Shown here: positions 6,447 through 41,781 of the stretch, piece after piece | Position numbering within the stretch: the stretch's first letter is position 1 | Layout of the letters: every line of letters begins with the position of its first letter | Virus record (IMG/VR): IMGVR_UViG_3300049217_000071 | Location: 62,001-126,000 of that record | Length of the DNA: 64,000 bases | Strand: one strand, 5' to 3' | Notes under the pieces: model-generated | Databases searched by the model: none | What the model saw: the letters and a program-made list of their open reading frames with translations, nothing else | Told to the model about the DNA's origin: nothing | Position numbers and translations under genes: made by a program

Positions 6447-6475
6447 AACGTATTCTCGGAATCTGGTGAGTTGCT

Positions 6476-6731
6476 ATGAAAATAGAAATCGAAGCGGTAG
6501 AGCTAATGGACTTGTTGGCCCAGCAAGAGCGTCAGGTGCGAGCTAACATTCAGCTCGTCCAATCACAAGAGGCTATTCCTGAGGGGGCGTGAGTTGGCTA
6601 TCAAGATGAGCGAGATTGTTCGCTTCATTAGGTTTGGTGATAGGGTAGGGGCCATCAAAATGGTTCGCGATCTAACAGGCATCGGCCTGAAAGAGGCTTA
6701 CGATTTGGTTGATGGCAACCTTCTCTTCTGA
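6476..6731 (+). pseudogene. ribosomal protein L7/L12 C-terminal-domain-like gene, frameshifted at a G5 run (6583-6587)
   Basis: 6606-6731 reads ...RVGAIKMVRDLTGIGLKEAYDLVDG; the upstream part 6476-6592 is in another frame. Confidence 0.75.
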
Positions 6732-7496: not shown

Positions 7497-7557
7497 ATAG
7501 CCTCCATATTATTGTCTCACCCCTATGGTAGATTATTACTCATATAGGGGAGGTCAT

Positions 7558-7734
7558 ATGGAAACGGTCATAGAGATTTTGCTTATGATGTTGTGGGATT
7601 TAGGGAAGACCGTATTGATCCAATGGTTATGGGTCAAGATCAAAGAAATGTATTCATCTCACAAGATGGGTAATCCCGCAATCGGCTTGAGACAATTATA
7701 TGGATTTGGGATCGACTTATTAGGGGCTAATTGA
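7558..7734 (+). CDS. small hypothetical protein
   Basis: GGAGG RBS before ATG 7558. Confidence 0.45.
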   Translation: METVIEILLMMLWDLGKTVLIQWLWVKIKEMYSSHKMGNPAIGLRQLYGFGIDLLGAN

Positions 7735-7752
7735 AAAAATAGCGCCGGCCCC

Positions 7753-7780
7753 TTGACTTGCATTTCGTAAGATATACATT
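7753..7780 (+). promoter_or_regulatory. sigma70-type promoter of tsf
   Basis: TTGACT-16nt-TACATT. Confidence 0.7.
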
Positions 7781-7799
7781 GACGGAAGAGGAAGATATT

Positions 7800-8699
7800 A
7801 TGAACAACGCTGAACTAATTAGGGAGCTTCGTGCTTTGACATCTGCTGGTATGAAAGACTGCCGTGATGCCTTGGAAGAGTCCGCCTGGGACTTGCAGAA
7901 AGCCGTCGACATTGTCAAGATCAAAGGCCTCAATATTGCTGATGGTCGCACTGGTCGTGTGGCCTCAGAAGGCAAAGTCGGCATTCTGTTCACATCCCCG
8001 ACTGAACCGGCTCACATTGTCGAGATCAATTGCCAGACTGACTTCGTAGCCAACAGCGATGGTTTCAAGAAGTTTGCTGCCATTACTCTAACTAAGTTGG
8101 GCGAGGTAGGACCTACCTTCACTGCTGCTATGGTAGAGGGTGACCGTAAAGAACTTGTCTCTACAACCAAGGAGAACATTGTGGTTCGTAGGTGGCAGAC
8201 CATTACTCCGGCCGCCTTCTCTCCTCTTACCAGAGTGTTCGGATATCAGCACTCCAATGCCAAGCTGGGCGTTTTGATGGTGCTACAAGCTTCCAATGAA
8301 GCTGTGGCCAATAGCCCCGAGCTACAGATTCTGGGCGAAGACCTGGCTATGCAAGCCTGTGCTATGAACCCTATAGCCGTCTCCCCGGAAAGCGTTCCCC
8401 AAGAAGAGAAGGATCGTCAAAAGGTTATCTTTGAAACTCAACTTCAAGAAGAGAAGAAGCCAGAGAAGATGTGGACCAAGATTTTGGAAGGTAAGTTCCG
8501 TAAGTGGAACTCCGAAGTCTGTCTGCTGGAGCAGGATTCGGTGGTTGTCGAGAAGACAGCCGTGAAGCAAGTAGTCAAGAATGTAGGAACCAAATTGGGC
8601 GGAGAGATTCAAGTGTTGAGTTTCGTTCGCTATCAAGCTGGTGAAGGAATCGAAAAGAAACAAGACAACCTCGCTGAGGAAGTCGCTAAAATGATGTAA
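7800..8699 (+). CDS. tsf: elongation factor Ts
   Basis: ELR..T.AGM.DC..AL, R.ASEG, EINCQTDFVA, AMQ..AM.P, CLLEQ. Confidence 0.95.
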   Translation: MNNAELIRELRALTSAGMKDCRDALEESAWDLQKAVDIVKIKGLNIADGRTGRVASEGKVGILFTSPTEPAHIVEINCQTDFVANSDGFKKFAAITLTKLGEVGPTFTAAMVEGDRKELVSTTKENIVVRRWQTITPAAFSPLTRVFGYQHSNAKLGVLMVLQASNEAVANSPELQILGEDLAMQACAMNPIAVSPESVPQEEKDRQKVIFETQLQEEKKPEKMWTKILEGKFRKWNSEVCLLEQDSVVVEKTAVKQVVKNVGTKLGGEIQVLSFVRYQAGEGIEKKQDNLAEEVAKMM

Positions 8700-8707
8700 G
8701 GTGTAAG

Positions 8708-9007
8708 ATGACCGATAATACGCAAGAATTGATCAACAAGTTGACGAACGCTATCTCCTTCAAGTTCAAGGAAGATGGCACCTCCCCAGGTCTAACTATC
8801 TCTCGCCTGAGAAATAGCTACTACTGTTCTGTGGTCCGCTACCCTAAGGGTTCGGCGCTCTCCACCAAGAACAAGGTCGTAGTGTGCAAGGCCGAAGCTG
8901 ATACTTTGGACTCGGCTCTCAAGACCGTGGCTAAGGAGTTTGTCAATTTGGCCAAGGTGCAACGCGATCCTCTGCAAGAGCTGAGCGATATCGTTCAGGG
9001 GGCCTAA
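8708..9007 (+). CDS. hypothetical protein
   Basis: operon packing. Confidence 0.65.
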   Translation: MTDNTQELINKLTNAISFKFKEDGTSPGLTISRLRNSYYCSVVRYPKGSALSTKNKVVVCKAEADTLDSALKTVAKEFVNLAKVQRDPLQELSDIVQGA

Positions 9008-9369
9008 TGAAGCGAGAAGAGCTATTAGCTGAGATGAAGGGGTGCATTGGCACTCAAGAACCCGTTGTCTTCTTTGAGAAGATGGTGGACGTTTTTGATA
9101 TGCTGTTTGATCGTATTGATGAGTTAGATGCCGAAGTGCATCGAGTCAAACTGCAATCGGCGTTGGCCATTCAATGGGAGCCCAAGATGGCCTCCGCCAT
9201 GTTGGCTGGCCAAATCAATTTTCTTCGTCAAGACAAAGACACTTACTTCAATGAGATTACAGAATTGAAGAAGGCTTTTGTGGAAGATTCGATCACGCAA
9301 AACTACAACGACTTCTGTGAGTTTTGGACAAGAACTCTTGGTTGGCACCCTTTCTTGGAATACAAATGA
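9007..9369 (+). CDS. hypothetical protein
   Basis: TAATG coupling. Confidence 0.65.
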   Translation: MKREELLAEMKGCIGTQEPVVFFEKMVDVFDMLFDRIDELDAEVHRVKLQSALAIQWEPKMASAMLAGQINFLRQDKDTYFNEITELKKAFVEDSITQNYNDFCEFWTRTLGWHPFLEYK

Positions 9370-9644
9370 CACCTCTCGAAGCCTTAGAACGAGCTATGTT
9401 TTTTATTTCGGGAGTCTGTTCCCAAAAGACATTGAATGTGCCAGGCGCGGTAGTGAGTCGTCTTTCTAAAGAAGCACGAGAAGCTTTGTGTGAATTAAAG
9501 TCGTCTGATGTAGACGGTAAGACTGCGCCAGTGGAACATATCCGTTATTGGATAGCCCCTCATCAGTATGAGCCTATGTATCGAAAGCCCGAGTATGTCC
9601 AAGATCGTTTGGACTTTGACAAGAAGATCCTCAAAAATGCTTGA
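9366..9644 (+). CDS. hypothetical protein
   Basis: ATGA coupling. Confidence 0.55.
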   Translation: MTPLEALERAMFFISGVCSQKTLNVPGAVVSRLSKEAREALCELKSSDVDGKTAPVEHIRYWIAPHQYEPMYRKPEYVQDRLDFDKKILKNA

Positions 9645-9864
9645 TAAGGATTTAGACGGGTTAAGTGCAGAGGAGTTAAAAATCGAGGTCAAAAAGCTTC
9701 GTGCCGGCATCAGGCAGCACCGCGATGCCACTGGTCATAATCTTTGCTGGTTTGTTCCTGAACTTTGGGACCTATTGCCAGAGAAGATTACGCCTGTTCC
9801 CCAGGTGCCATCCGAGGAGGAGTTCTTGTATAACTGTCGTCTGTATCGTCAAACCCTGAAATAA
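9637..9864 (+). CDS. hypothetical protein
   Basis: LRAGIRQHRDATGHNLCW..PELW.LLPE. Confidence 0.65.
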   Translation: MLDKDLDGLSAEELKIEVKKLRAGIRQHRDATGHNLCWFVPELWDLLPEKITPVPQVPSEEEFLYNCRLYRQTLK

Positions 9865-9899
9865 GGCTCTGGTAATACCGCGTTATATACGGTAGGTAT

Positions 9900-9974
9900 T
9901 CAGGGTTCGACTAATGGTCGGTCGCAAGCCTCCGAAGCTTTGAAATATGGGTTCGAATCCCATACCCTGAACCA
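9900..9974 (+). tRNA. tRNA-Arg (CCG)
   Basis: TCAGGGT/ACCCTGA acceptor, aagc-ctCCGaa-gctt, CCA. Confidence 0.9.
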
Positions 9975-10153
9975 TGAAAACTTTAGAACACAACCTTTAT
10001 ATTGAAGTGCAAGACACTCCTGATGGTCAAAAGATCCTGGATGAGCTAGTGGTTTGGCTCTGTGGATTGAAACACGAATATCCTAAAGCATATCTCAATG
10101 GTTGGATCGGCCCAGTCAAAGAGACTAAGAAGAAGTCCAAAAAATCAAAATGA
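9974..10153 (+). CDS. hypothetical protein (59 aa, below the ORF-track cutoff)
   Basis: MKTLEQHLY...KKSK*; stop overlaps the stub ATG at 10150. Confidence 0.6.
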   Translation: MKTLEHNLYIEVQDTPDGQKILDELVVWLCGLKHEYPKAYLNGWIGPVKETKKKSKKSK

Positions 10154-10194
10154 AATCCTTGGGCAAGCTGGTTTACTCACCACGCACCCACCTC
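10150..10194 (+). pseudogene. orphaned N-terminal stub of the 10939 gene
   Basis: MKSLGKLVYSPRTHL vs MKSIGKLVYNPRSHL at 10939. Confidence 0.9.
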
Positions 10195-10891
10195 AAGACA
10201 GATTCTGCAATGCAGAAATCTGTCCAACCTTCGCAAGAAAATTCTCTTGGGAGAGTGTTCCCTTCATTTTATTGCACGTGAAACAGCAGGATACGCAGTT
10301 GTCCAACTCATATCCTCGATCGTTATCGATTCGATCAATGCCGTTTCTAACCTCCCTGCCGACTTGTGTTTTGGTATGCGGCAGATCACCGCAATAAAAG
10401 CATCGAGCCGTGCATAGTTGTTTGAACTCATCAACAGTCATATCGAAATGAAGACTAGATTTTCTGTGCAGATCTGCCCTTCTAACGATGACCCTGGCGA
10501 CATAGGATCTGTATTCTGTGGGCCATGGGTCTTTTGAAATGGACTTTACCTTGTTATAGCAGCCACAAGATACCGTAGGAGATTTACCAGGTCCACTCTG
10601 TACTCTCAAGTTGCTAATCAATACCGTAGTGGTATTGCCACATTCACACCGGCACAATACAGTTGGGCATCCGTTTTTCCAAGTCCCTACTCTCGCTAAC
10701 ACCGTAAGCTTTCCAAACGTCTGTCCAACATACCTGTAAGGTCTTTCTGATAGGTGTGCACTCTCGATCAATCGTCTGACTGCATGTTCCGAAAGCTTCA
10801 ATCGTTTGGAAATGCTTTTTCGGCTATGACCGGCCGCCCACAGTTTGAATATCTCGTCCGTTTGAACCTGGCTAAAAACGATCCTTTTCAT
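10193..10891 (-). mobile_element. free-standing HNH endonuclease gene
   Basis: HTH, G.TFGKLTV, CRCECG, SCGC, CFYCG, NGIDRIDN..GY...NCVSCC..CN..K; GAGGTG RBS before ATG 10891. Confidence 0.9.
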
Positions 10892-10938
10892 CTTGCACCT
10901 CTCACCCATTATGCCCATATATAGCGAACAGATGCCAA

Positions 10939-11343
10939 ATGAAATCCATAGGGAAGCTAGTGTACAATCCTCGTAGTCATCTAGGATCGAGTGAAAAGTG
11001 GGCCATTTTGGCATGTGATGATGAGATTTCCAAATACTACAGGCATCTCTTCACCAAGGACTACCCGTATTTGAACGGAGAGCGAGTGGGCAAGCTGACC
11101 CGTCCGGTGTGGGGAACTCACATTTCTATCATTCGAGGGGAATATATTCCGAACTTCAAGCTATGGGGTCTGGACGCCAACAAGGTGATCGAGTTCACTT
11201 ACGAAGGTGGCGTTATAGACAACGGTGAATACTACTGGTTGAAAGTCAACTGTCCTTATATTGGAGATTTGCGCGAGAAGTATGGGTTGAAGAGGGAGCC
11301 GAAATTTGGTTTCCATTTGACTATCGGGAGAACCACAGAATGA
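10939..11343 (+). CDS. putative 2H phosphoesterase
   Basis: two Hx[ST] motifs: THISII and FHLTIG. Confidence 0.65.
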   Translation: MKSIGKLVYNPRSHLGSSEKWAILACDDEISKYYRHLFTKDYPYLNGERVGKLTRPVWGTHISIIRGEYIPNFKLWGLDANKVIEFTYEGGVIDNGEYYWLKVNCPYIGDLREKYGLKREPKFGFHLTIGRTTE

Positions 11344-17538: not shown

Positions 17539-18516
17539 ATGAAAGTTCTCGTCTATGGTTGGTATTACAAGGGTAATATCGGGGATAACTTGTTTGTTCA
17601 CGCTTTCAAACGACTGTTTCCTAATCTTCAGTTAGTTTTTACTGATACCATTAGCGAGAAGAGATTAGAGGATGTAGGTGCCGTTTTCTTCGGAGGCGGC
17701 TCTTTTCTTTTGGATCCTCCCTCTATCACGGGGCCTTTTGATAAGACGTGGGGCCTATTGAAGGCCAAGAAAATATTCTATCTGGGCGTAGGAGTGGAAT
17801 TAGAAATCCATCCTTTGCATCAAGAGCTGATGGCTCAAGCCGGTCTCATTGCCATCCGCTCTGCTGATCAAGTGGAACGTGTCAAGGCTATCAACCCGAA
17901 CACACGTTTCGTGCCGGATTTAGTATACGCTTTACAGGCAGATGTCAAGTCTGCTTATCGTAAAGAAGAGAAGTCTATCTTTGTGATGCCGAATATCACT
18001 GTAGTTCCGCAAGCTACCGATCCTTATTGGAAACATGCGGCCTGGTCTTATTTCAAGTCGGAGTTCGCTCAGTTCTTGGACTGGACAGTAGAGGAGGGCT
18101 ACAAACCACAGCTTTTCTCTATGTGTCGTAATCGAGATATGAGCGATGAGTGGGCAGCCACCGAAATCCTCAGTCATATGAAGAATCGCAATAGTGGGTT
18201 CATTCAGGAAGATCGTCCCCTGGAAATAGGTTTTATGTCCGAGGTGATGTCTAAACACGATTTGGTTATCACGCAGAGGTTTCACGGAATTGTTTTGGCC
18301 GAGATGACCAGGCTCCCGTATATTGCTATTCACCATCACGATAAGCTAAAGTTTTCTTCTCCTAATGATGGTGCTTTTCTTTCCTATTATAATTGTTCCA
18401 AACGACTGTTGATGGATACATTTGTGAGTGCTTTACAGATGAATTATCCTACTCTCCTACCAATAGAATCAAATATCTTTGAGACGCTCACTTCAGATGT
18501 GATGAGCCTCCTATGA
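17539..18516 (+). CDS. polysaccharide pyruvyl transferase family
   Basis: GWY..GNIGD, GGGS, PDLVY, RFHG. Confidence 0.88.
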   Translation: MKVLVYGWYYKGNIGDNLFVHAFKRLFPNLQLVFTDTISEKRLEDVGAVFFGGGSFLLDPPSITGPFDKTWGLLKAKKIFYLGVGVELEIHPLHQELMAQAGLIAIRSADQVERVKAINPNTRFVPDLVYALQADVKSAYRKEEKSIFVMPNITVVPQATDPYWKHAAWSYFKSEFAQFLDWTVEEGYKPQLFSMCRNRDMSDEWAATEILSHMKNRNSGFIQEDRPLEIGFMSEVMSKHDLVITQRFHGIVLAEMTRLPYIAIHHHDKLKFSSPNDGAFLSYYNCSKRLLMDTFVSALQMNYPTLLPIESNIFETLTSDVMSLL

Positions 18517-18528
18517 TATGGGTGATGG

Positions 18529-19830
18529 ATGGTGCGATTTGTCGGAGTCAAAGACAACTACATTTGTGTAGTCTCAGATAGTTCATTTACTGACGAAACT
18601 CTACAAGTGATAGAGGTTCCGGCCGAATTGTCGCACATTTCTCCTACTGACCTGATTACTAACTGTATTATAAAAAATGGTCAGATTAGATGTAAAAGCT
18701 CCCATAAGCCAACTAATCAACTAAAGGTAGCATTAGTAGGCAATTGGAAAATGAGATGTGGTATCGCTACCTATTCAGAACACCTCTGGCCCCAAGTCGT
18801 CAAGTATATTGGTGATTACAAACTCTTCATAGAGAAAAACGATTTGCCGACCGGCGACATTCACCAAATAGGTGATCAGATGATCCCTGATTCACAAGTA
18901 GTGGCTTGTTGGAAACGTGGCGAATCTCTCCGACCTTTGATCAAAGAGTTGAAAGAATATCACCCAGACATCGTTTGGATTCAGCACGAGTTTGGTTTGT
19001 GGCCCAACGCCAGTTATTGGTTGGCTATGATGAACCAGCTCTCTGATTATCGAGTCATCGTCACGATGCACTCCGTTTTCCATCACCGAGACAAGACCAT
19101 CATCGAGGCCTCAATGCCAGAGATTGTGGTGCACCTGGAGGGCGCCAAGAAACTTCTGCAAGAAGAAAAGGGCTTGAGTGCCAAGGTGTCTGTTATTCCT
19201 CACGGCTGCTACGATTATAACGGAGAGCGCCTGTGGAATACCTACAAGTCTCAAAAGACTTTCTTGCAGTTTGGGTTTGGGTTTCGCTACAAAGGATGGG
19301 AAAACGCCATTCGAGCTACTGCCCTTCTCAAAGAGAAGTATCCTGACATCTTTTTCACTGGTTTGTTTTCCGAATCTCCTTATGCCAAAACAGAGCACCA
19401 AATGTATTACAATGAGCTAATGCGTTTGGTAGACGAGTTGGGAGTGCGGGAAAATGTCTCCATCTTGCGAGGTTATCAGTCGGATGCCGCTTTGGACAGC
19501 TTCTTACGCACCAATCAGGCCACTATTTTCCCTTACATCTCTCATCCAGAACATGAAGTCTTTGGGGCTTCGGGAGCGGCTCGTATGGCTATGTCCAAAG
19601 GGCTGCCTGTCATCACCTCTTCCGTCAATCATTTCTCGGATTTACCTACTATCAAGGCCGATTCGCCAGAAGAGATTGCTCAAGCTTTGGAAAACCTTTT
19701 CACTGTCTCGGGTGCTAAGGAAAAGCAGATCCAAGCCCAAATAAGCTATATACAGGAAAACACTTGGGAAAAAGTTGGTTTACGCTACATCTCTCTCCTT
19801 GAAGATGAAATTGTTGATAAAAAACGATAA
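18529..19830 (+). CDS. GT4-like glycosyltransferase
   Basis: CGIATYS, IQHEFG, IPHG, FGF...YKG.E, GASGA...AM..G.PVI. Confidence 0.9.
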   Translation: MVRFVGVKDNYICVVSDSSFTDETLQVIEVPAELSHISPTDLITNCIIKNGQIRCKSSHKPTNQLKVALVGNWKMRCGIATYSEHLWPQVVKYIGDYKLFIEKNDLPTGDIHQIGDQMIPDSQVVACWKRGESLRPLIKELKEYHPDIVWIQHEFGLWPNASYWLAMMNQLSDYRVIVTMHSVFHHRDKTIIEASMPEIVVHLEGAKKLLQEEKGLSAKVSVIPHGCYDYNGERLWNTYKSQKTFLQFGFGFRYKGWENAIRATALLKEKYPDIFFTGLFSESPYAKTEHQMYYNELMRLVDELGVRENVSILRGYQSDAALDSFLRTNQATIFPYISHPEHEVFGASGAARMAMSKGLPVITSSVNHFSDLPTIKADSPEEIAQALENLFTVSGAKEKQIQAQISYIQENTWEKVGLRYISLLEDEIVDKKR

Positions 19831-19835
19831 GATCT

Positions 19836-20036
19836 ATGAAATTGTCGCTTGACGGCACTGACATCCTAACTGGTAAGCCAGCTGATACTCAAGTTTCCAA
19901 GGATATGTGGGTAGTCGATGGAATGAAATCCATTTCTCTCAAGGCTTGGCCTGAAGATAACAATGGTGGGGCCGCCTTCATCTTTACCAGCGCTAACAAT
20001 AGCGTAGCTGTTCATACTCACGGCGATTTGTCTTAA
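19836..20036 (+). pseudogene. probable fragment of a longer phage gene
   Basis: ends abruptly at the start of the HNH remnant. Confidence 0.4.
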
Positions 20037-20208
20037 CGGAATTGATAGAGTTGACAACGAGACGGGTTATATATTGGATAACTGTATTACGTGTTGTAAG
20101 ATATGCAATTACGCCAAATCTACGATGCCTTACGAAGATTTCATTACGTGGATCGATAATCTTGTCAAATATCGAGTATCACTAAATAATACGGAGAATG
20201 TCCTATGA
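20035..20208 (+). pseudogene. HNH endonuclease C-terminal remnant
   Basis: no start; NGIDRVDNETGYILDNCITCCKICNYAK, same family as the 10193 and 24278 HNHs; stop overlaps NAMPT ATG. Confidence 0.88.
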
Positions 20209-21602
20209 ATGAGAATTACCTGTTTGATACTGACAGCTATAAAGCAAGCCATTATCTTCAGTATCCCGAAAAAACCACGAGTATGTTTTCTTACGTCGAA
20301 AGCAGGGGCGGAGATTACAATGCAACCGTTTTCTTTGGGCTACAATACTTCCTCAAGGCTTATCTTACTTATCGCGTTACGCCCAAGGATGTGGAAGAAG
20401 CTAAAGAGTTCTATACTGCTCATGGCGTGCCATTCAATTATGATGGTTGGATGTATGTTGCTAAAGACCTAAAAGGTAGGTTGCCTGTCAGGATTAGGGC
20501 AGTGCCAGAGGGAACTATCGTTCCAACCCACAATATCTTGGTAAGCATCGAATCGACCGATCCTAAGGCCTTTTGGGTTGTTTCCTGGTTGGAGACAATG
20601 TTGCTACGATACGTGTGGTATGGAACTACCGTAGCCACCAGAAGTCGTAGAATTAGGCAGACAATCTTGGAAGCTTTGCGAAAGACTGCCGATGCTCCTG
20701 ATACAGAAATCAGCTTCAAACTTCATGACTTTGGTTCTCGTGGGGTGAGCAGCCAGGAAAGTGCTATGCTTGGAGGCGCAGCTCATCTCATCAATTTTAT
20801 GGGCAGCGATACCATCGCGGGCATCAGATGCGCTAACAAATACTACGACTGCCCGATGGCAGGTTTTAGTATTCCTGCTGCGGAACACTCTTCTATCACT
20901 TCGTGGGGTAAAGAACACGAGGTAGATGCGTATGCCAACATGCTAACACAGTTTGCCAAACCAGGAGCTTTGGTAGTTGTGGTAAGCGATAGCTATGATT
21001 TGTGGAATGCCTGTGAGCATCTCTGGGGCGAACAGCTCAAGCAGAAAGTTATAGATTCCGGTGCGACGGTTGTAATTCGTCCTGATAGTGGCCATCCTCC
21101 GGCCGTAGTGCTCAAGACCCTACAGATATTGGATAGTAAGTTTGGACACACAATCAATACTAAGGGGTATAAAGTCTTGAACAATGTTAGGGTTATCCAA
21201 GGTGATGGCATCAATGAGCACTCGATAAGAGACATTCTGAATGAGTTTATGTGGGATAAATACAGTGCCACCAATGTTGCCTTTGGTATGGGTGGTCAGC
21301 TATTGCAAGGTCTCAACCGAGACACTCTCAAGTTTGCTATGAAGTGTTCTTCCATTACTGTCAATGGTGAAGTGCGAGATGTCTTCAAGGATCCGATCAC
21401 CGATCACGGTAAAGTAAGCAAGGCAGGACGCTTGGATCTGGTCAAACGAGATGGTCATTTTGAGACGATTGAGATTAGCCGAGGAGACCAGGCTTCTCAC
21501 GACAACTTCAGTGAGATGCAAACTGTCTATGAGAACGGTCAGATTTTGATTGACGATACGTTCGAGAATATCCGTGCTCGTGCTAAAGGAGAAATGGTAT
21601 AA
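20205..21602 (+). CDS. nadV: nicotinamide phosphoribosyltransferase (NAMPT)
   Basis: TDSYKASH, HDFGSRG, SIPAAEHS, VSDSYD, IRPDSG, IQGDG, FGMGG.LLQ, RDT..FA.K. Confidence 0.95.
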   Translation: MNENYLFDTDSYKASHYLQYPEKTTSMFSYVESRGGDYNATVFFGLQYFLKAYLTYRVTPKDVEEAKEFYTAHGVPFNYDGWMYVAKDLKGRLPVRIRAVPEGTIVPTHNILVSIESTDPKAFWVVSWLETMLLRYVWYGTTVATRSRRIRQTILEALRKTADAPDTEISFKLHDFGSRGVSSQESAMLGGAAHLINFMGSDTIAGIRCANKYYDCPMAGFSIPAAEHSSITSWGKEHEVDAYANMLTQFAKPGALVVVVSDSYDLWNACEHLWGEQLKQKVIDSGATVVIRPDSGHPPAVVLKTLQILDSKFGHTINTKGYKVLNNVRVIQGDGINEHSIRDILNEFMWDKYSATNVAFGMGGQLLQGLNRDTLKFAMKCSSITVNGEVRDVFKDPITDHGKVSKAGRLDLVKRDGHFETIEISRGDQASHDNFSEMQTVYENGQILIDDTFENIRARAKGEMV

Positions 21603-21622
21603 ATTGTTTGAGATATTAAAAA

Positions 21623-22189
21623 ATGATATACGCCATCAGTTTCAAGCATAAGATTCCTGAGGGCGTCCTGTCTATGGATGTGACGTCCAGGTCAGGCACC
21701 TGGGGTAGGCACTTTAGCCCTTTCAATCTGGGGCCGGTCGATCTATATGACGGCTATGTGTCCCGCAACATCGAGAATGCCTTTCAGTATTCCAAGGTGT
21801 ATGCGGAATATTCTACCGTCTATGAACTGCCGGCTCCCCATTATTGGGAGTGGGCCAAAGCTGGTTGGGATAATCCTAAACCCAACAAGTATCCTATGGG
21901 TGCTTGGAACAAACACTTGTATCATTGGTGGGATAATAAGAAGCTGACCAACCTGGAAGCTCAAAACCAAATCTTCTTACCTCTCTACAAGAAGGCGGTG
22001 ATTGATACGCCAGCTTTCAAGAAACTGAAGGACAATTATCTGCATTCCGACAAGGATATTTATTTGATTGACTTCGAGGGGTATAATCATCGATTTTTGG
22101 AAAAGACCTGGGATCAGGTTATAAATGATCCCGACCGACCTGTGGGGCAAGCTTTTGCCCTGTGTATGTTGTTAGAAGGATACTTATGA
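21623..22189 (+). CDS. uncharacterised protein, paralog 1 (DUF6939-like, possibly NADAR-related)
   Basis: DVTSRS, FSPF, IENAFQYSKVY, YPMG, DFEGY. Confidence 0.7.
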   Translation: MIYAISFKHKIPEGVLSMDVTSRSGTWGRHFSPFNLGPVDLYDGYVSRNIENAFQYSKVYAEYSTVYELPAPHYWEWAKAGWDNPKPNKYPMGAWNKHLYHWWDNKKLTNLEAQNQIFLPLYKKAVIDTPAFKKLKDNYLHSDKDIYLIDFEGYNHRFLEKTWDQVINDPDRPVGQAFALCMLLEGYL

Positions 22190-22749
22190 TTCATGTCATT
22201 GGGCCTAATGATAAAGCTCCTGAAGGGGCTGCCATCATCAATACTACTTCCAGATCGAATACCTGGAGTCATTCACTGAGCCACTTTTTCTGTGGCCCCG
22301 TGGATTTATATGGTGGCTACAAATCTCTCAATGTGGAGAATGCTTGGCAGTTTTCCAAAGTGTATGAATACTACTTGGAAGCGGATGGTTCTGTAGGAGA
22401 ACGATACTTCAAGTGGGCCCAAGACGGATGGAACGATAAGTATGCTCATCGATATCCAATGGGTAAAGGAGTGGCCCCTCTGTTTTCCTATTGGGACGGA
22501 TATAGCCTGACATATGTAGAGGCTCGTAAAAAGATTTACATTCCTCTGTATTCTAAGGCGGTGCAAGAAACTTTCGCCTTTGAGAAATTGAAAAAGATGC
22601 ATCAGGAAGGCGCCGACCTTTACTTGTGGGATTTCGATGGTTATGATCATAAGATGTGCAATTTGTCTTATGAGCAGGTCATCAATAATCCTGACAGGAA
22701 GATGGGACACGCTTTTGTCATTGCAATGTTGTTAGAAGGCCACTTATGA
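22186..22749 (+). CDS. uncharacterised protein, paralog 2
   Basis: TTSRS, VENAWQFSKVY, YPMG, ARKKIYIPLY, DFDGY, GHAF. Confidence 0.75.
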   Translation: MIHVIGPNDKAPEGAAIINTTSRSNTWSHSLSHFFCGPVDLYGGYKSLNVENAWQFSKVYEYYLEADGSVGERYFKWAQDGWNDKYAHRYPMGKGVAPLFSYWDGYSLTYVEARKKIYIPLYSKAVQETFAFEKLKKMHQEGADLYLWDFDGYDHKMCNLSYEQVINNPDRKMGHAFVIAMLLEGHL

Positions 22750-23042
22750 TGACTATCGAAGAAGAGATTCAACATCTCATTACGTTTTTACGACACCCTG
22801 GTGGATTCGATGTAGATATGAGTGGGATCTTATGTATTCGTCCTATTGATGAGGGCTCTCCTCCTACTTCCTGGGAAGTTGATTGGGAAGAGATAGATGA
22901 CGGTATCATCCTCAATTTCTCAAAAGAATTTCCCAACCTTGAAGAGGCGGCTCAGTTCTTCGTGGAGAAAAGGCACTACCTGTGTGAAGGTGCGGATTTT
23001 CAATTGATAAGAATGAAAGAAGCGGGATTGATCAATGAGTAA
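22746..23042 (+). CDS. hypothetical protein
   Basis: ATGA coupling. Confidence 0.6.
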   Translation: MMTIEEEIQHLITFLRHPGGFDVDMSGILCIRPIDEGSPPTSWEVDWEEIDDGIILNFSKEFPNLEEAAQFFVEKRHYLCEGADFQLIRMKEAGLINE

Positions 23043-23949
23043 TGTCATACTGGGAACGGCAGTAGCGGATGCTTTGGGAATGCCCTTCGAGAAGAAGCTG
23101 TCTAACGACCCGCTTTTGTTGGCTTGGGACGGTAAGACCTTTTTAGGCAGCGAGCATCATAAGCTGAAGCCGGGTCAATGGACAGACGATTCGCAATTCT
23201 CTCAGGCGGTTGCCCAATCTCTGATTCAGAATAATGGATTCAATCCACAGGATTTGGCCGATCGTTATGTGGATCTGTTTACTTCGGAAACCATTCGAGG
23301 TTATGGAAGAACTACTTTGTTGGCCGTGACCAACCTCTTGGAAGGGAAGCACTGGAGTGAATCTGGCGTAGCCGGTTCCTATGGTAATGGCACGGCAATG
23401 AGAGCCGCCCCCTTCGGTATTTACTTCCGCAATGACTTGAAGATGTTGGTAGAGGCTTGCAAGATTGATAGCGCCATCACTCATGCTTCCGAAGAAGCCG
23501 AGGCCGGTTCTATCGCCATTGCTTTGGCCACAGCCTATGCGGTCAATAATGATCTGGAAGATGTATTGGAGCGCCTGCATGAGAAACTGCCTGACAGTAA
23601 GGTCAAGACACTGGTGTATAGTTTGAGTGCCTTGCTGGATACCAAGCACATTGCTCCTTCAACGGCTCTGCGTGTTCTGGGCACCAAGGCTGATGTGAGA
23701 GAGACAGTGCCTTCTGCCCTATATTGCTTCCTCAAGTTCAAGAAGTATGGGGACGCTGTTATTGCGGCTATTCGAGCCGGGGGAGATACTGATACTACAG
23801 GCGCCATTGTTGGCGCGATGTTTGGAGCTAAGCTGGGGATGAACGGAATGGATCGTGCCATCTATCAGCAGGTAGAAGATTTCGATAAGCTGGTGGAATT
23901 AGATAGCCAGCTTTACAATCGATCCAACGACAACTTTCTAAGGAACTAA
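23035..23949 (+). CDS. ADP-ribosylglycohydrolase (DraG/ARH family)
   Basis: G.AVADALG, WTDD, GNG.AMR, ITH, GGDTDT.GA. Confidence 0.95.
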   Translation: MSNVILGTAVADALGMPFEKKLSNDPLLLAWDGKTFLGSEHHKLKPGQWTDDSQFSQAVAQSLIQNNGFNPQDLADRYVDLFTSETIRGYGRTTLLAVTNLLEGKHWSESGVAGSYGNGTAMRAAPFGIYFRNDLKMLVEACKIDSAITHASEEAEAGSIAIALATAYAVNNDLEDVLERLHEKLPDSKVKTLVYSLSALLDTKHIAPSTALRVLGTKADVRETVPSALYCFLKFKKYGDAVIAAIRAGGDTDTTGAIVGAMFGAKLGMNGMDRAIYQQVEDFDKLVELDSQLYNRSNDNFLRN

Positions 23950-23953
23950 GATC

Positions 23954-24223
23954 GTGAAAAAGAAAAATGTCAAACCCAAAGAAACTACTATTCAGATAAA
24001 GTTCGCCAATGAAGCTGCTGCGCATCATTTTGCACTCTGGCTGTGTGAGGGCGGTGAGCAAGATTATTGGAATTGGATGGAGTATCGTGAACGAGAAGAA
24101 AAGGGCGATATTACTGTTGTCATTTTTGATTATCACGGCCCCGAAGATAAGCCAGAACTTTGTGGTGAGTTTATGCACGATAACACAATTAGAACCACTG
24201 TAGGTCGATTAGATAAAGATTAG
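23954..24223 (+). CDS. hypothetical protein
   Basis: WLCEGGEQDY..WM. Confidence 0.65.
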   Translation: MKKKNVKPKETTIQIKFANEAAAHHFALWLCEGGEQDYWNWMEYREREEKGDITVVIFDYHGPEDKPELCGEFMHDNTIRTTVGRLDKD

Positions 24224-24277: not shown

Positions 24278-24853
24278 ATGAAAAACGCTGATTATGTGGG
24301 CATCGAGATCAATGGGCTGAAAATTGTAGGATATCGATGCACCAAAGGTGCCAGTCGCCGAACATATTTTACCTGCATTTGTCTTTGTGGTAAAGAGTTT
24401 GAGTCGCGTGCTGAAGCTATTAAAAATGGTATGGCCAGAAGCTGTGGGTGTAAGACTTCTGAATTGATGTCTGCGGCCCATACTTTAGATGGTGATTTTG
24501 CCGCCATAAATATAGTCTATAGACGTTACAAATACACGGCAAAAAGAAAAAGCATACCGTTTTTACTATCATCAGATCAATTCAAGCAATTTATTTTTCA
24601 GGATTGCAGTTATTGTGGAGCTAAACCAAAATTGTCTATTATGAAAATTGGTGGTAATGCAGGCCGAAAAACTGTCAAACAACTGACATATAACGGAATT
24701 GATCGTGTAGATAATAACATTGGCTATACAGTTAGTAATTGTATTACGTGTTGCTCATTTTGTAATGGTGCCAAGTCTGATTTTTCGTTGGAAGAATTTC
24801 GGATTTGGATCAAACAACTCGTCTCATTTATGAATGGTAGGAATAATGCCTGA
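24278..24853 (+). mobile_element. free-standing HNH endonuclease gene
   Basis: CICLCG, SCGC, CSYCG, NGIDRVDN..GY...NCITCC..CN.AK. Confidence 0.9.
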
Positions 24854-31361: not shown

Positions 31362-31946
31362 TTGACCTGTATAGTCGGATTAGTAGATAAGGGCGATGTA
31401 TACATTGGTGGTGATAGTGCTGGAGTAGCTGGATTATCTCTCTCTATTAGGGCAGATGAGAAGGTCTTTGGTAATGGTCCGTTTTTGATGGGCTTCACAA
31501 CTTCTTTTCGTATGGGTCAGTTGCTCCGATATAAGTTTGATCCTCCCGCCCAAACAGTGGGACAAGAGGATATGCGGTATATGGTGACCAGCTTTATCGA
31601 TGCTGCCCGCCAATGTTTTTCCCAGAATGGTTTCGGTGATAAAGAGGCCACTCAGGGAGGTTCTTTCTTGGTAGGGTATAAGAGCAAGCTCTACTCTATT
31701 GAATCTGACTACCAGGTAGGTATTCCCGCCACCCCGTTTGATGCAGTGGGTTGTGGTTCTGATTTGGCTCTGGGAGCCTTATATGCCACTGCCGGCCTCA
31801 AACCAGAATTGCGTGTTCGCACCGCTTTGGAAGCTGCCAGTTCTTTTAGTGCCGGAGTAGCTCCTCCATTTACTATTCTCAAGTTGTCTGGGGCCCCACC
31901 CAAGAAGGTCAAGCCTAAGAAGAATGCCGCTAAGCCAGTCAAGTAA
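31362..31946 (+). CDS. Ntn-hydrolase, HslV/proteasome-beta-like peptidase
   Basis: MTCIVGL..GGDS, KVF, AVGCGSDLALGAL. Confidence 0.8.
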   Translation: MTCIVGLVDKGDVYIGGDSAGVAGLSLSIRADEKVFGNGPFLMGFTTSFRMGQLLRYKFDPPAQTVGQEDMRYMVTSFIDAARQCFSQNGFGDKEATQGGSFLVGYKSKLYSIESDYQVGIPATPFDAVGCGSDLALGALYATAGLKPELRVRTALEAASSFSAGVAPPFTILKLSGAPPKKVKPKKNAAKPVK

Positions 31947-31964
31947 TCATTTGGAGATAATGCG

Positions 31965-32984
31965 ATGTCAAAGTTAGAGTATGTTTGGTTAGATGGCTGT
32001 AAACCTATGCAGAGTTTACGTAGTAAAACCAAAATCTTCAATAGGGTAAACTTACTAGACAGTTTTCGATTAGATCAATGCCCCATGTGGGGGTTTGACG
32101 GCAGCTCTACGGAACAGGCTACCGGAGACAAATCAGATTGTGTATTACAGCCAGTCTTTATGACCAGAGATCCTCAACGTAAAGGTGATTGTTATTTGGT
32201 AATGTGTGAGGTGCTCAATGCAGATGGCACACCTCATGCCTCTAATACCCGAGCCACCATTGAAGACGATAGTGAGGATTATTGGTTTGGTTTTGAGCAG
32301 GAGTATTTCCTATGGAATCCTGAGACCAATAAACCATTAGGTTTTCACGAAGTGCATACCACTCGTCCTCAAGGCCCTTATTATTGTTCAGTAGGTGCCA
32401 GCAATGCCTTTGGTCGAGAAATTGTGGAAGAGCACCTGGATGTATGTCTCGAAGCTGGCCTCAAGATCGAGGGCATCAATGCTGAGGTGGCCCCGGGCCA
32501 ATGGGAGTTTCAGGTTTTCGCCAAGGGAGCTAAGTTAGCAGGAGACCAATTATGGTTGGCCCGCTATCTATTGGAACGAATTGGCGAGAAACACGGAGTA
32601 GCTATCAATTGGCATTGTAAGCCCCTTGGTGATACAGACTGGAATGGCAGTGGAATGCATACCAACTTCTCTAATTCTCTATTGAGAACCTGTGGTAAAT
32701 CAGAAGTCTATGCCAAGGTATGTCAGGCTTTCAAGCCCGTGGTCAAAGAACATATGGATGTCTATGGCCCCCATAATGAAATGCGCTTGACAGGTAAACA
32801 CGAAACGGCTGCCATTGACCAGTTCTCCTACGGGATATCTGACCGAGGAGCCTCTATTCGTATCCCGATGGCTACCGTCAATAACGATTGGAAGGGCTGG
32901 TTAGAGGATAGGCGACCAAACAGTGCCGCTGACCCTTATCTGGTAGCTTCTAGAATTATCAAGACTCTCAAGACCGTTGGCTGA
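31965..32984 (+). CDS. glnII: glutamine synthetase type II
   Basis: EYVWLDG, LRSKT, FDGSST.QA, GFEQEY, QGPYYC, NAEV..GQWEFQ, WNGSGMH.NFS, RLTG.HET, RGASIRIP, EDRRP. Confidence 0.95.
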   Translation: MSKLEYVWLDGCKPMQSLRSKTKIFNRVNLLDSFRLDQCPMWGFDGSSTEQATGDKSDCVLQPVFMTRDPQRKGDCYLVMCEVLNADGTPHASNTRATIEDDSEDYWFGFEQEYFLWNPETNKPLGFHEVHTTRPQGPYYCSVGASNAFGREIVEEHLDVCLEAGLKIEGINAEVAPGQWEFQVFAKGAKLAGDQLWLARYLLERIGEKHGVAINWHCKPLGDTDWNGSGMHTNFSNSLLRTCGKSEVYAKVCQAFKPVVKEHMDVYGPHNEMRLTGKHETAAIDQFSYGISDRGASIRIPMATVNNDWKGWLEDRRPNSAADPYLVASRIIKTLKTVG

Positions 32985-40867: not shown

Positions 40868-41350
40868 TTGATCGAAATAATTACTGGCGACCTCTTGGCG
40901 TCTAAAGAAAAGTATCTGTTGCATCAGACTAACTGTATCTCTACCAAAGGTGCAGCCGGAGTTGCCAAATCTATTTTTGATAAGTATCCTTATGCTGATT
41001 GCTATGCTGATCGTATCGAAACGTCCAAGCCCGGAACAATCGATATTCGGGGTAATGATCAAGATCAGAGGTTGATAATCAATCTTCACGGTCAGTATTA
41101 TCCTGGTCGCTCCCGATATCCTCTTTCAAGTTTAGATGGTCTAGCTCCTCGTCAGAAATACTTTTACAATGGTTTATTGCGTGTAGCCAAGATCGAGAAC
41201 CTGAAAAGTATAGCATTGCCTTGGAGGGTTGGTTGTGGTCTTGGTGGCGGAGACTGGGAATGGTATTTGGGAACGCTGACTAACTTCGCTAACTATGTAG
41301 GTGAAAAGGGCGTCAGAGTTTGTGTTTACCGTAGAGAAGGAGACGAGTAA
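40868..41350 (+). CDS. macrodomain ADP-ribose hydrolase
   Basis: I.GDLL, HQTNC, GAAGVAK.I, SIALP..VGCGLGGG.W. Confidence 0.92.
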   Translation: MIEIITGDLLASKEKYLLHQTNCISTKGAAGVAKSIFDKYPYADCYADRIETSKPGTIDIRGNDQDQRLIINLHGQYYPGRSRYPLSSLDGLAPRQKYFYNGLLRVAKIENLKSIALPWRVGCGLGGGDWEWYLGTLTNFANYVGEKGVRVCVYRREGDE

Positions 41351-41781
41351 TGGCTATCAAATTCTATCGCACTAAAGATCCGCACGGGTATATGGGCAAC
41401 TTCTATCGAGCTAGAATGTTCATCTATGGCCGTTGGTGGAACTGGGTGGAGTCTCCTTATCAGGCAGAGAAGAGTTTAGATCGAGCGGAACAGGATATGA
41501 TCTGGCAGGCACAGAAGCCAATGGAGGCCAGAGACCTGGGACAGAAGGTCAAGATGCGAGAGGGCTGGGATCTCGTCAAGGATATGGTGATGTATGATTG
41601 CGTCATGGCCAAGTTCTTGCAACACAAGAACATCCGCGACCAATTGATCGCTACCGGAGACGAAGAGCTAATCGAAGATTCACCCGTCGATTGGTATTGG
41701 GGTTGCGGCAAAGATGGAACTGGACAGAATCATCTGGGCCAGATTCTTATGCGAGTTAGAAAAGAGTTGCAGGGCGAGTAA
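41350..41781 (+). CDS. NADAR (YbiA) family protein
   Basis: FY, NF, VE..YQA.K, W..VK..VM, AKF.QH, L..TG...L.E.SP.D.YWG, GQN.LG.ILM.VR. Confidence 0.95.
   Translation: MAIKFYRTKDPHGYMGNFYRARMFIYGRWWNWVESPYQAEKSLDRAEQDMIWQAQKPMEARDLGQKVKMREGWDLVKDMVMYDCVMAKFLQHKNIRDQLIATGDEELIEDSPVDWYWGCGKDGTGQNHLGQILMRVRKELQGE

What the first reader, a model, noticed from the sequence alone, without database searches (positions are those of the whole stretch)
20205..23949. NAMPT - tandem unknown paralogs - ADP-ribosylglycohydrolase operon
NAMPT is followed by two ~188-aa paralogs (TSRS, ENAxQ(F/Y)SKVY, YPMG, DFxGY, G(Q/H)AF; both end ATGTTGTTAGAAGG..ACTTATGAT), a small ORF and an ARH. Known: phage NAMPT is part of the NARP2 pathway that rebuilds NAD+ against NAD-depleting defences, and ARH removes ADP-ribose. 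Inference: the E-x3-Q-x2-K motif resembles NADAR (E..YQA.K, as at 41350), so the paralogs may be a new ADP-ribose eraser family. No NMNAT partner is visible in this window.
Basis: partly seen in the sequence, partly recalled or inferred. Interest (0 to 1): 0.7.

Follow-up and report, generated by a model that had tools for sequence, protein, structure and literature searches.

The report
NADAR-like eraser pair beside phage NAMPT
A giant phage carries, packed between its NAD+-salvage enzyme NAMPT and an ADP-ribosylhydrolase, two old paralogs of an uncharacterised protein family (Pfam DUF6939) that fold like NADAR enzymes and keep their catalytic residues, so they are probably ADP-ribose-removing enzymes used against bacterial NAD+/ADP-ribose defences.

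Summary
On the + strand lie NAMPT (20205-21602), paralog A (21623-22189), paralog B (22186-22749), a 98-aa ORF (22746-23042) and an ADP-ribosylglycohydrolase (23035-23949). They are separated by 20 nt or overlap (ATGA).

A and B are 46% identical. They are not a new family: both belong to Pfam DUF6939, a large uncharacterised family of huge phages and giant viruses, rare in bacteria.

- In exhaustive PDB searches the three solved NADARs are the top three hits for both models (Z 8.9-9.2, 6.9-7.4, 6.7; next 5.0-5.4).
- 37 of 98 family members weakly hit Pfam NADAR-DarT1.
- The NADAR E-x6-K pair is almost invariant, and an invariant Asp follows the last strand.
- The domain is repeatedly fused or adjacent to canonical NADAR, DUF4326, SLOG, 2H, Nudix and SIR2.

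A-type and B-type are ancient clades with fixed pocket differences, and each occurs alone in relatives.

The missing NMNAT is explained. All syntenic relatives carry a bifunctional NMNAT/Nudix gene just upstream of NAMPT. Here a 3' HNH remnant marks a deletion at that spot.

Enzyme activity and substrate are untested. This is a new variant of a known kind, of moderate interest.

The parts
19836..20036 (+). Conserved 66-aa ORF. In relatives it lies between the glycosyltransferase and the NMNAT/Nudix gene. Here it marks the left edge of the deletion.
   Evidence: Homologs at 58-80% identity in 12 syntenic loci, always upstream of NMNAT/Nudix; no Pfam family.
20035..20208 (+). 3' remnant of an HNH homing endonuclease gene (last ~53 codons only). 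It is the scar of a deletion that removed NMNAT/Nudix. It also holds the best sigma-70-like promoter match of the region (20162-20190).
   Evidence: tblastn: 55% identity to residues 139-191 of the intact HNH at 24278-24853. Locus L015 has the order orf66, NMNAT/Nudix, HNH, NAMPT. Promoter scan 10/12, a consensus match only.
20205..21602 (+). Nicotinamide phosphoribosyltransferase (NAMPT/NadV), the first enzyme of the NARP2-type NAD+ rebuild.
   Evidence: PF18127 plus PF04095, NF006629 649 bits, phrog_448, PDB 7yqo 1e-170.
21623..22189 (+). Paralog A: an A-type DUF6939 protein with a NADAR-like fold. It has Glu51, Lys58 and Asp150. Its clade has fixed changes at otherwise conserved sites: R89K, R114Q, Y118F, D151E, H175Q, W54F/Y.
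   Evidence: PF22075 24 bits (below the cut-off of 27) and PF22397 E 0.02. Model pLDDT 97; VIA Z 9.2, 7.4 and 6.7 to 8bat, 2b3w and 8bau. Separate clade with SH-aLRT 100. Residue table.
22186..22749 (+). Paralog B: a mainstream B-type DUF6939 protein with a NADAR-like fold. It has Glu51, Gln55, Lys58, Asp149 and Asp151. His33 is unusual at a near-invariant Pro. Its start overlaps the stop of A (ATGA).
   Evidence: PF22075 32.3 bits, above the cut-off of 27. Model pLDDT 96. Foldseek and VIA top three are NADAR. Conservation.
22746..23042 (+). 98-aa ORF of unknown function, conserved between the DUF6939 gene(s) and ARH in the lineage. ATGA overlap with B and an 8-nt overlap with ARH.
   Evidence: Homologs in 7 syntenic loci. 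No Pfam, PHROG, NCBIfam or PADLOC family. Atlas: only phage hypothetical proteins.
23035..23949 (+). ADP-ribosylglycohydrolase (ARH/DraG superfamily), nearest to MJ1187 and ARH3. The TDD and GGDTDT motifs are present.
   Evidence: PF03747 229.6 bits, phrog_6572. PDB 1t5j 8e-25, ARH3 3e-19. Motifs were read in the translation; their role as metal ligands is from my knowledge of ARH3/DraG.
23954..24223 (+). 89-aa ORF that follows ARH in relatives as well. Function unknown.
   Evidence: Homologs at 53-73% identity in 4 syntenic loci, directly after ARH; no family.
24278..24853 (+). Intact HNH homing endonuclease, inserted between the 89-aa ORF and the UvrD-like helicase. It is a mobile insertion, not part of the functional module.
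   Evidence: PHROG endonuclease families down to 1e-12. In relatives L026, L066 and L084 the 89-aa ORF is followed directly by UvrD.
41350..41781 (+). Canonical NADAR of the same phage, listed for comparison. The phage therefore has three NADAR-fold genes.
   Evidence: PF08719 117.8 bits.

Best explanation
The two genes encode ancient paralogs (A-type and B-type) of Pfam DUF6939. I conclude that DUF6939 is a divergent branch of the NADAR superfamily, nearest to the Asp-type, DarT1-associated NADARs. Most likely they are ADP-ribosyl N-glycohydrolases. In that mechanism a helix carrying Glu51-x3-Gln55-x2-Lys58 holds the distal ribose and the diphosphate, and Asp149, at the end of the last strand, completes the catalytic centre, so that ADP-ribose is cut from a nitrogen of its carrier. 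My preferred substrate is a base-ADP-ribosylated nucleic acid: guanine-N2-ADPr made by DarT1-like toxins, or another base. The fixed pocket differences between A and B would then give two specificities.

The genes are translationally coupled with NAMPT upstream and an ARH3/DraG-like hydrolase downstream. In relatives a bifunctional NMNAT/ADP-ribose-pyrophosphatase, and sometimes NadE, belong to the same block. The block as a whole reads as an 'erase and recycle' island of a roughly 430-480 kb phage. In that reading the erasers free ADP-ribose from conjugates, the Nudix domain splits it, and NAMPT plus NMNAT rebuild NAD+. In this phage the NMNAT/Nudix gene has been deleted, so the second step must come from the host or from a CinA/NadD-like phage protein elsewhere in the genome.

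Shown: gene order, family membership, fold similarity, residue conservation, fusions, synteny and the deletion. Inferred: catalysis, the substrate, the recycling flow and co-transcription.
For: - Family: B exceeds the DUF6939 gathering score; A is 46% identical to B.
- Fold: both models are confident (pLDDT 96 and 97). In an exhaustive comparison with 48,161 PDB chains the only three NADAR structures rank 1-3 (Z 8.9/6.9/6.7 for B and 9.2/7.4/6.7 for A), covering 135-151 of 188 residues; the next hits score 5.0-5.4. Foldseek gives probability 0.98 and 0.94 for 8bat and 2b3w.
- Sequence: 37 of 98 family members individually hit Pfam NADAR-DarT1 (best 6.4e-6), and no other family recurs. Geobacter NADAR is the only PDB hit of the 26-sequence profile and the top hit of a single family member; with the 98-sequence profile it ranks fourth, behind marginal hits to designed TIM barrels. 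The alignments put family Glu/Lys on its VESAFQSSK motif.
- Conservation over 150 clusters at 50% identity: E51 151/151, Q55 147/151, K58 148/152, D149 143/147. E and K with this spacing are the catalytic residues of E. coli C7 NADAR (E88, K95) and AdfN-T4 (E36, K43). The subfamily-defining charged residue sits in the last strand and is Asp in DarT1-linked NADARs (PMC11543638, PMC11825919, PMC11125620); the model's last strand, 146-149, is followed by the invariant Asp.
- Fusions: to canonical NADAR (4 of 10 long proteins examined), DUF4326, YAcAr-SLOG and 2H phosphoesterase.
- Adjacency: canonical NADAR lies directly next to DUF6939 in L037, L058 and L064.
- Bacterial neighbours: SIR2, NUDIX (twice), SLOG and DUF4326.
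- Synteny: NMNAT/Nudix, NAMPT, [NadE], DUF6939, orf98, ARH in 14 of 80 viral loci and in L008-L010.
- Packing: a 20-nt gap, then ATGA, ATGA and 8-nt overlaps, with no convincing terminator inside.
- Precedent: phage NADARs are proven anti-DarTG1 enzymes (PMC11825919), and NADAR genes next to phage NadV/NadM were noted before (PMC9503650).
Against: - No biochemical data exist for any DUF6939 protein (literature searches were empty).
- The structural similarity is moderate: Foldseek TM 0.33-0.43, rmsd above 4 A, and Z just above the 7-8 that unrelated models can reach according to the tool's own note.
- A profile-profile comparison with a small NADAR alignment was not significant.
- There is no hit to PF08719, and PDB sequence E-values are only 0.13-0.47.
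- I could not superpose residues, so the equivalence of Asp149 with the NADAR third catalytic residue rests on secondary-structure position only.
- No DarT-like gene was seen next to any DUF6939 gene.
- In 66 of 80 viral loci the gene is not near NAMPT or ARH but among replication and nucleotide-metabolism genes.
- In the A-type clade the catalytic-position Lys is relaxed (K 43, R 33, G 6 of 84).
- B here carries His at a near-invariant Pro.
- The ADP-ribose docking job was not run by the tool.
Confidence: 0.6

Rival explanations
1. The paralogs act on soluble, low-molecular-weight N-glycosidic ADP-ribose derivatives, such as cyclic ADP-ribose-type immune signals or other NAD+ breakdown products, rather than on modified nucleic acids. 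They would linearise these to ADP-ribose, both silencing the signal and feeding the Nudix/NAMPT/NMNAT salvage line.
For: In this lineage the genes sit inside the NAD+ salvage block. Bacterial neighbours are NUDIX ADP-ribose-pyrophosphatase-like genes, SIR2 and SLOG, and fusions are to SLOG, 2H and DUF4326. Iyer et al. argue on contextual grounds that most phage NADAR, Macro, SLOG and Nudix domains target soluble ADPr derivatives (PMC9503650, PMC7824862). No DarT-like toxin was seen nearby.
Against: Every NADAR assayed so far in the papers read acts on base-linked ADPr in nucleic acids (PMC11543638, PMC11125620, PMC12945103, PMC11825919). The nearest structural and sequence relative is the DarT1-associated, DNA-acting type. 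In most phages the gene lies among DNA replication and nucleotide-metabolism genes.
Confidence: 0.28
2. They are nucleotide-metabolism N-glycosidases of the YbiA kind, clearing ribosylamine-type intermediates or damaged nucleotides. They would have no role in ADP-ribose biology, and the position next to NAMPT and ARH would be lineage-specific synteny without functional meaning.
For: E. coli YbiA, a NADAR, was described as an N-glycosidase of riboflavin intermediates (as cited in PMC9503650 and PMC11125620). In other phages DUF6939 lies near IMPDH, thymidylate synthase, ThyX, DHFR and topoisomerase genes. The NAMPT/ARH linkage is found in only 14 of 80 viral loci.
Against: Fusions and adjacencies are overwhelmingly to ADP-ribose-network domains: NADAR, DUF4326, SLOG, 2H, NUDIX and SIR2. 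YbiA itself hydrolyses guanine-ADPr in vitro (PMC11125620). The family is closest to the DarT1-linked type, not to YbiA.
Confidence: 0.08
3. A and B work only together, as an obligate heterodimer (one catalytic subunit and one regulatory or substrate-binding subunit). That would explain the conserved tandem arrangement and the relaxed Lys in A-type proteins.
For: Tandem A-B with a stop/start overlap is found in the window and in L012, L013, L017 and L026. A-type proteins have fixed changes at conserved positions and a variable catalytic-position Lys.
Against: Close relatives carry only B (L008, L011, L014, L015, L018, L019, L085) or only A (L054, L058, L060, L066, L084) in the same slot. A soil relative has A joined directly to orf98. 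In L058 the second slot holds a canonical NADAR instead. The solved and assayed NADARs in the papers read were used as stand-alone proteins.
Confidence: 0.04

Closest known systems
DarT1-associated NADAR antitoxins (DarG1; Pfam PF22397; BC4488-type; structures 8BAT, and 8BAU for the general fold)
   Same: Best structural match for both paralogs (Z 8.9 and 9.2, 150-151 residues aligned). Recurrent weak Pfam hits (37 of 98 members). Shared N-terminal S-[KR]-S ... LS-x-F ... E-x3-Q-x2-K stretch. An acidic Asp rather than Glu at the end of the last strand.
   Different: Only about 18% identity, and below the Pfam gathering score. No DarT toxin next to any DUF6939 gene examined. Shorter (187-188 aa, against 219-254 aa for the solved chain). 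The family is mostly viral. Activity is unknown.
Phage orphan NADARs AdfN (T4 gp30.3, AdfN-Bas32, AdfN-Bas60), anti-DarTG1 factors (PMC11825919)
   Same: Stand-alone NADAR-fold proteins encoded by large phages without a toxin partner, with the Glu/Lys pair conserved. This is the precedent for a phage eraser of DNA ADP-ribosylation.
   Different: AdfN-T4 is of the His type. No Escherichia phage was hit by tblastn with B, so DUF6939 is a different branch. No phenotype is known.
Canonical NADAR/YbiA (Pfam PF08719), including the phage's own copy at 41350-41781
   Same: Same fold class (Z 6.7-7.4) and the same E-x6-K motif. Often fused or adjacent to DUF6939.
   Different: No significant sequence or profile match. 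It has a Glu in the last-strand motif. Co-occurrence and fusion argue for complementary rather than redundant roles.
NARP2 NAD+ reconstitution pathway (Nampt + Nmnat; bioRxiv 10.1101/2024.02.11.579819)
   Same: NAMPT is present. Relatives carry the KVP40-like bifunctional NMNAT/Nudix immediately upstream.
   Different: In this phage the NMNAT/Nudix gene is deleted at the syntenic site and absent from the 268-kb record. The eraser genes are not part of NARP2 as defined.
NAD+/ADP-ribose gene neighbourhoods of large phages described by Iyer, Burroughs, Anantharaman and Aravind (PMC9503650, PMC7824862)
   Same: They report NADAR genes next to NadV/NadM in phages, and fusions among NADAR, Macro, SLOG, Nudix and DUF4326. 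The present island fits this picture.
   Different: I found no mention of DUF6939/PF22075 in the searchable literature. The A/B paralogy and the deletion of NMNAT are specific to this case.

Membership tests
Pfam DUF6939 (PF22075) | HMM score at or above the gathering threshold (27 bits) | tested here: met
   B scores 32.3 bits. A scores 24.0 bits (below threshold) but is 46% identical to B and falls inside the family tree; 96 of 98 relatives hit the model.
NADAR superfamily | [quoted passage not shown] | tested here: met
   The three solved NADARs are ranks 1-3 of 48,161 chains for both models (Z 8.9-9.2, 6.9-7.4, 6.7), over 135-151 residues; the next hit scores 5.0-5.4. The similarity is moderate (TM 0.33-0.43).
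NADAR superfamily | Conserved catalytic Glu and Lys spaced E-x6-K on one helix | tested here: met
   E51 151/151 and K58 148/152 over cluster representatives. HMMER aligns them to the Glu/Lys of Geobacter NADAR. In the A-type clade the Lys is K, R or G.
NADAR superfamily | [quoted passage not shown] | tested here: inconclusive
   The invariant Asp149 (D-F-D in B-type, D-F-E in A-type) directly follows the last strand, 146-149, of the model. No residue-level superposition was possible, and the hhalign placement was not significant.
NADAR superfamily | Significant match to a NADAR sequence model (PF08719 or PF22397) | tested here: inconclusive
   No PF08719 hit. For PF22397, A has E 0.02 (14.8 bits against a cut-off of 27), and 37 of 98 members hit at E below 0.1, best 6.4e-6.
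NADAR superfamily | Hydrolysis of ADP-ribose from a base nitrogen | not testable with these tools
   Needs enzyme assays. The ligand co-folding job was not run by the tool.
DarTG1-type toxin-antitoxin / AdfN counter-defence | Genetic linkage to DarT1 (antitoxin), or rescue from DarT1 (AdfN) | tested here: not met
   No DarT (PF14487) in the phage record (the control genomes did not ring either, so this is weak). No DarT-like neighbour was seen in the bacterial loci inspected, where only selected neighbours were scanned against Pfam. Rescue is not testable here.
NARP2 | Nampt that makes NMN from nicotinamide and PRPP | tested here: met
   Full-length NAMPT, NF006629 649 bits. Activity is inferred from homology.
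NARP2 | Phage-encoded Nmnat partner | tested here: not met
   No homolog of the relatives' NMNAT/Nudix in the 268-kb record, and a deletion scar at the syntenic site. The record is only 62% complete, and a CinA/NadD-like protein exists at genome 10055-11185.
ADP-ribosylglycohydrolase (ARH/DraG, PF03747) | Full-length domain match with metal-binding Asp/Thr motifs | tested here: met
   229.6 bits over profile positions 2-284 of 287. TDD and GGDTDT are present in the translation; their role as ligands is from my knowledge of ARH3/DraG structures.

The most novel reading that the evidence does not exclude
DUF6939 is a functionally distinct, mainly viral branch of the NADAR superfamily whose A-type and B-type forms remove ADP-ribose from two different carriers, for example two different nucleobases, or DNA versus RNA or a soluble signal. 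Together with ARH, Nudix and NAMPT it would form a previously unrecognised 'erase-and-recycle' counter-defence module, which both reverses ADP-ribosylating immunity and channels the freed ADP-ribose back into NAD+. It would thus point to bacterial base-ADP-ribosylating defences not yet described.
Probability: 0.25. Interest if true: 0.75.

Novelty: new variant of a known kind. Interest (0 to 1): 0.5.

Why it matters
DUF6939 is large: about 1650 clusters at 50% identity, spread over huge phages, several cultured phage groups (Erwinia, Dickeya, Klebsiella, Citrobacter, Yersinia, Ralstonia) and giant viruses. It has no assigned function.

Linking it to NADAR turns it into a directly testable candidate class of ADP-ribose erasers, at a time when DNA and RNA base ADP-ribosylation (DarT1/2, pierisin-like toxins) and NAD+-centred immunity are being mapped. 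The cultured phages that carry a homolog make knock-out and rescue experiments feasible.

The fixed A/B differences offer a natural specificity experiment. The deletion of NMNAT/Nudix beside an HNH remnant shows how homing-endonuclease traffic remodels such islands, and warns against calling NARP2 from NAMPT alone.

Tried and rejected
- PHROGs, NCBIfam and PADLOC gave nothing for A, B or orf98.
- Megablast of the region against GenBank phages gave no match.
- Annotated records of cultured phages with homologs list only hypothetical proteins.
- Literature searches for DUF6939 and PF22075 found no papers. No supplement text is held for PMC9503650.
- hhalign of the family against a five-sequence NADAR alignment was not significant. 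That alignment was poor, so this is weak negative evidence.
- PDB sequence searches with profiles or single members never passed E 0.1 for NADAR.
- Co-folding of B with ADP-ribose: the tool did not fold ligand complexes.
- Rejected: a recent tandem duplication. The DNA is 61.5% identical and the two copies fall in separate clades on a long stem.
- Rejected: an obligate heterodimer.
- Rejected: the CinA/NadD-like protein as a specific replacement for the lost NMNAT. Relatives that keep NMNAT/Nudix have it too.
- The phage record has no KptA, DarT, NadE or PF01661 Macro.
- No RNA run holding the region was listed. That search was run with kind 'any', which the tool says is no search for RNA, so co-transcription could not be checked.
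- The Atlas search for orf98 gave no lead.

Full report
**What is there.** The window is part of a 268,344-bp IMG/VR virus record (window = record 62001-126000), estimated 62% complete. Complete relatives reach 480,838 bp, so this is a huge phage; the window also holds 17 tRNA genes. The probable source is a moss metagenome, with relatives in lake and soil samples. On the + strand lie:
- NAMPT, 20205-21602
- paralog A, 21623-22189
- paralog B, 22186-22749
- a 98-aa ORF, 22746-23042
- an ADP-ribosylglycohydrolase, 23035-23949

NAMPT and ARH are unambiguous. The spacing is a 20-nt gap, then ATGA, ATGA and 8-nt overlaps. The scan shows no convincing internal terminator; its best promoter-like match lies just upstream of NAMPT (consensus matches only). 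An independent assembly of the probable source sample reproduces 18500-23000 exactly. The only correction is that B starts at the ATG at 22186.

**The paralogs are a catalogued but unstudied family.** A and B are 46% identical (E 4e-59). B passes the Pfam gathering score for DUF6939 (PF22075). A falls just below it and has a weak hit to NADAR-DarT1.
- Size: more than 1700 clusters at 90% identity among close relatives, and 1652 clusters at 50% identity by profile search.
- Range: huge uncultured phages; Erwinia, Dickeya, Klebsiella, Citrobacter, Yersinia and Ralstonia phages; giant viruses. Only 24 loci were found in one genome each of 185,579 prokaryote species.
- Annotation: all annotated copies are 'hypothetical', and no paper in the searchable library mentions the family.

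**Is it NADAR-like?** Four lines of evidence say yes.
- Fold. AlphaFold models of B and A are very confident (pLDDT 96 and 97). The Foldseek top three for B (the only model run through Foldseek) are Geobacter NADAR (8bat), E. coli YbiA (2b3w) and Phytophthora NADAR (8bau). An aligner that does not depend on Foldseek, run against 48,161 chains, puts the same three at ranks 1-3 for both models: Z 8.9/6.9/6.7 and 9.2/7.4/6.7 over 135-151 residues. The next chains score 5.0-5.4 and are unrelated phosphatase-like folds.
- Sequence. When 98 members are scanned one by one, 96 hit DUF6939 and 37 hit NADAR-DarT1 (best 6.4e-6); no other family recurs. Among solved structures, Geobacter NADAR is the only hit of the 26-sequence profile and the top hit of a single member. 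With the 98-sequence profile it ranks fourth, behind marginal hits to designed TIM barrels. It aligns the family's S-[KR]-S ... LS-x-F ... E-N-A-x-Q-x-S-K stretch to its own.
- Residues. Across 150 cluster representatives Glu51 is invariant, Gln55 is 147/151, Lys58 is 148/152 and Asp149 is 143/147. Glu and Lys with exactly this spacing are the catalytic pair of E. coli C7 NADAR (E88, K95) and of T4 AdfN (E36, K43). The third, subfamily-defining charged residue lies in the last strand and is Asp in the DarT1-linked type (PMC11543638, PMC11825919, PMC11125620). In the models the invariant Asp directly follows the last strand.
- Caveats. The similarity is moderate (TM 0.33-0.43). A profile-profile test against a small NADAR alignment was not significant. 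I could not superpose residues.

I conclude that DUF6939 is a divergent branch of the NADAR superfamily, nearest to the Asp-type DarT1-associated NADARs. My confidence in the homology is about 0.85.

**Context as functional evidence.**
- Fusions. Of ten long family members, four are fused to canonical NADAR, one of which also carries DUF4326. One each is fused to a YAcAr SLOG domain, a 2H phosphoesterase and a CoiA nuclease.
- Adjacency. Canonical NADAR lies directly beside DUF6939 in three unrelated viral loci. In L058 it occupies the slot that B has here.
- Bacterial neighbours. In Bacillus sp. M6-12, SIR2 lies upstream and NUDIX downstream. In Lacrimispora, NUDIX lies upstream. In Acidobacteriota, a SLOG gene lies upstream and DUF4326 is fused or adjacent.

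All of these are components of the NAD+/ADP-ribose network defined by Aravind's group, who also noted NADAR genes next to phage NadV/NadM (PMC9503650, PMC7824862).

**Synteny and the missing NMNAT.** In 14 of 80 viral loci, and in L008-L010, the order is: glycosyltransferases, orf66, bifunctional NMNAT/Nudix, NAMPT, sometimes NadE, DUF6939 (A, B or both), orf98, ARH, orf89, UvrD-like helicase, Kelch protein. Here orf66 (19836-20036) is followed at once by the last 53 codons of an HNH endonuclease (20035-20208) and then by NAMPT. L015 shows the presumable precursor order: orf66, NMNAT/Nudix, HNH, NAMPT. The record has no homolog of the relatives' NMNAT/Nudix. Close relatives in lake and soil runs diverge exactly at 19843-19847 and at 20204. 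The NMNAT/Nudix gene was therefore deleted here. NARP2, as defined in bioRxiv 10.1101/2024.02.11.579819, is incomplete in the recovered part of the genome. A CinA-like/NadD-like fusion at genome 10055-11185 might adenylylate NMN or NaMN, but relatives that keep NMNAT/Nudix have it too. Outside this lineage and its sister clade, DUF6939 is not linked to NAMPT or ARH; it sits among replication and nucleotide-metabolism genes.

**Two paralogs.** A-type proteins form a separate clade on a long stem (SH-aLRT 100), while B-type proteins nest in the mainstream of the family. Fixed differences at otherwise conserved sites are R89K, R114Q, Y118F, D151E, H175Q and W54F/Y. The catalytic-position Lys is relaxed in A-type (K 43, R 33, G 6 of 84). 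Relatives carry both, only A or only B, and a soil strain joins A directly to orf98. So this is neither a recent duplication nor an obligate heterodimer. The likeliest reading is two specificities.

**Mechanism proposed.** I propose that both proteins are ADP-ribosyl N-glycohydrolases that work like NADARs.
- Preferred substrate: base-ADP-ribosylated nucleic acid (probability about 0.35-0.4). Every NADAR assayed in the papers read acts on such substrates, including phage AdfN against DarTG1 (PMC11825919, PMC11125620, PMC12945103), and the nearest relative is the DNA-acting type.
- Main rival: soluble ADP-ribose derivatives (about 0.28), favoured by the salvage and Nudix/SLOG/SIR2 contexts.

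Either way the island reads as erasers plus NAD+ rebuilding. Catalysis, substrate and co-transcription are inferred, not shown.

**Verdict.** Three corrections apply:
- The family already exists as DUF6939.
- The pair is ancient, not local.
- The NMNAT partner was lost by deletion.

I rate it a new variant of a known kind, of moderate interest and readily testable.

Noticed in passing
window 20035-20208: Truncated 3' end of an HNH homing endonuclease gene directly upstream of NAMPT. Relatives have NMNAT/Nudix (and sometimes an intact HNH) at this spot, so it is a deletion scar.
   Followed up: yes
window 22282-22284 (codon 33 of paralog B): B has His (CAC) where 119 of 120 B-type and 83 of 84 A-type proteins have Pro in the LSPF motif. 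An independent assembly of the probable source sample has the same base. The functional meaning is unknown.
   Followed up: partly
window 22176-22746 (run X4, soil metagenome): A related strain has a contig that joins 22176 to 22746 with 12 other letters between. That is, paralog B is absent and A is followed directly by orf98.
   Followed up: partly
window 40868-41781: A canonical NADAR (41350-41781, PF08719) is preceded, with a one-base overlap, by a 160-aa ORF (40868-41350) that has no Pfam hit. From memory its N-terminus looks Macro-like; this was not tested.
   Followed up: partly
window 24278-24853: An intact HNH endonuclease lies between the 89-aa ORF and the UvrD-like helicase. Several relatives have these two genes adjacent, so this looks like a mobile insertion. 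A third, more distant copy lies on the minus strand at about 10202-10570.
   Followed up: partly
window 3331-9974 and 47430-52379: 17 tRNA genes in two clusters (Met, Val x3, Gly x2, Arg x6, Leu x4, Glu x2), as expected for a huge phage.
   Followed up: no
own record 10055-11185, 22677-23876 and 31452-32054 (outside the window; loci L004, L091, L003): Three further nucleotide-cofactor genes: a CinA-like plus NadD-like fusion (376 aa), also present in relatives; a nucleoside-2-deoxyribosyltransferase-like plus NUDIX fusion (399 aa); and a 200-aa cytidylyltransferase-like protein that looks like CoaD to me (the CoaD reading is from memory).
   Followed up: partly
L060:2931-3191 and 11 other syntenic loci: A ~92-aa Cys-rich ORF (two CxxC pairs) sits directly upstream of the DUF6939 gene in 12 relatives. 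It is absent from this window, where NAMPT is followed by A after 20 nt.
   Followed up: no
window 17539-19830: A polysaccharide pyruvyl transferase and a GT4/GT1 glycosyltransferase lie upstream of the island and are syntenic in relatives.
   Followed up: no
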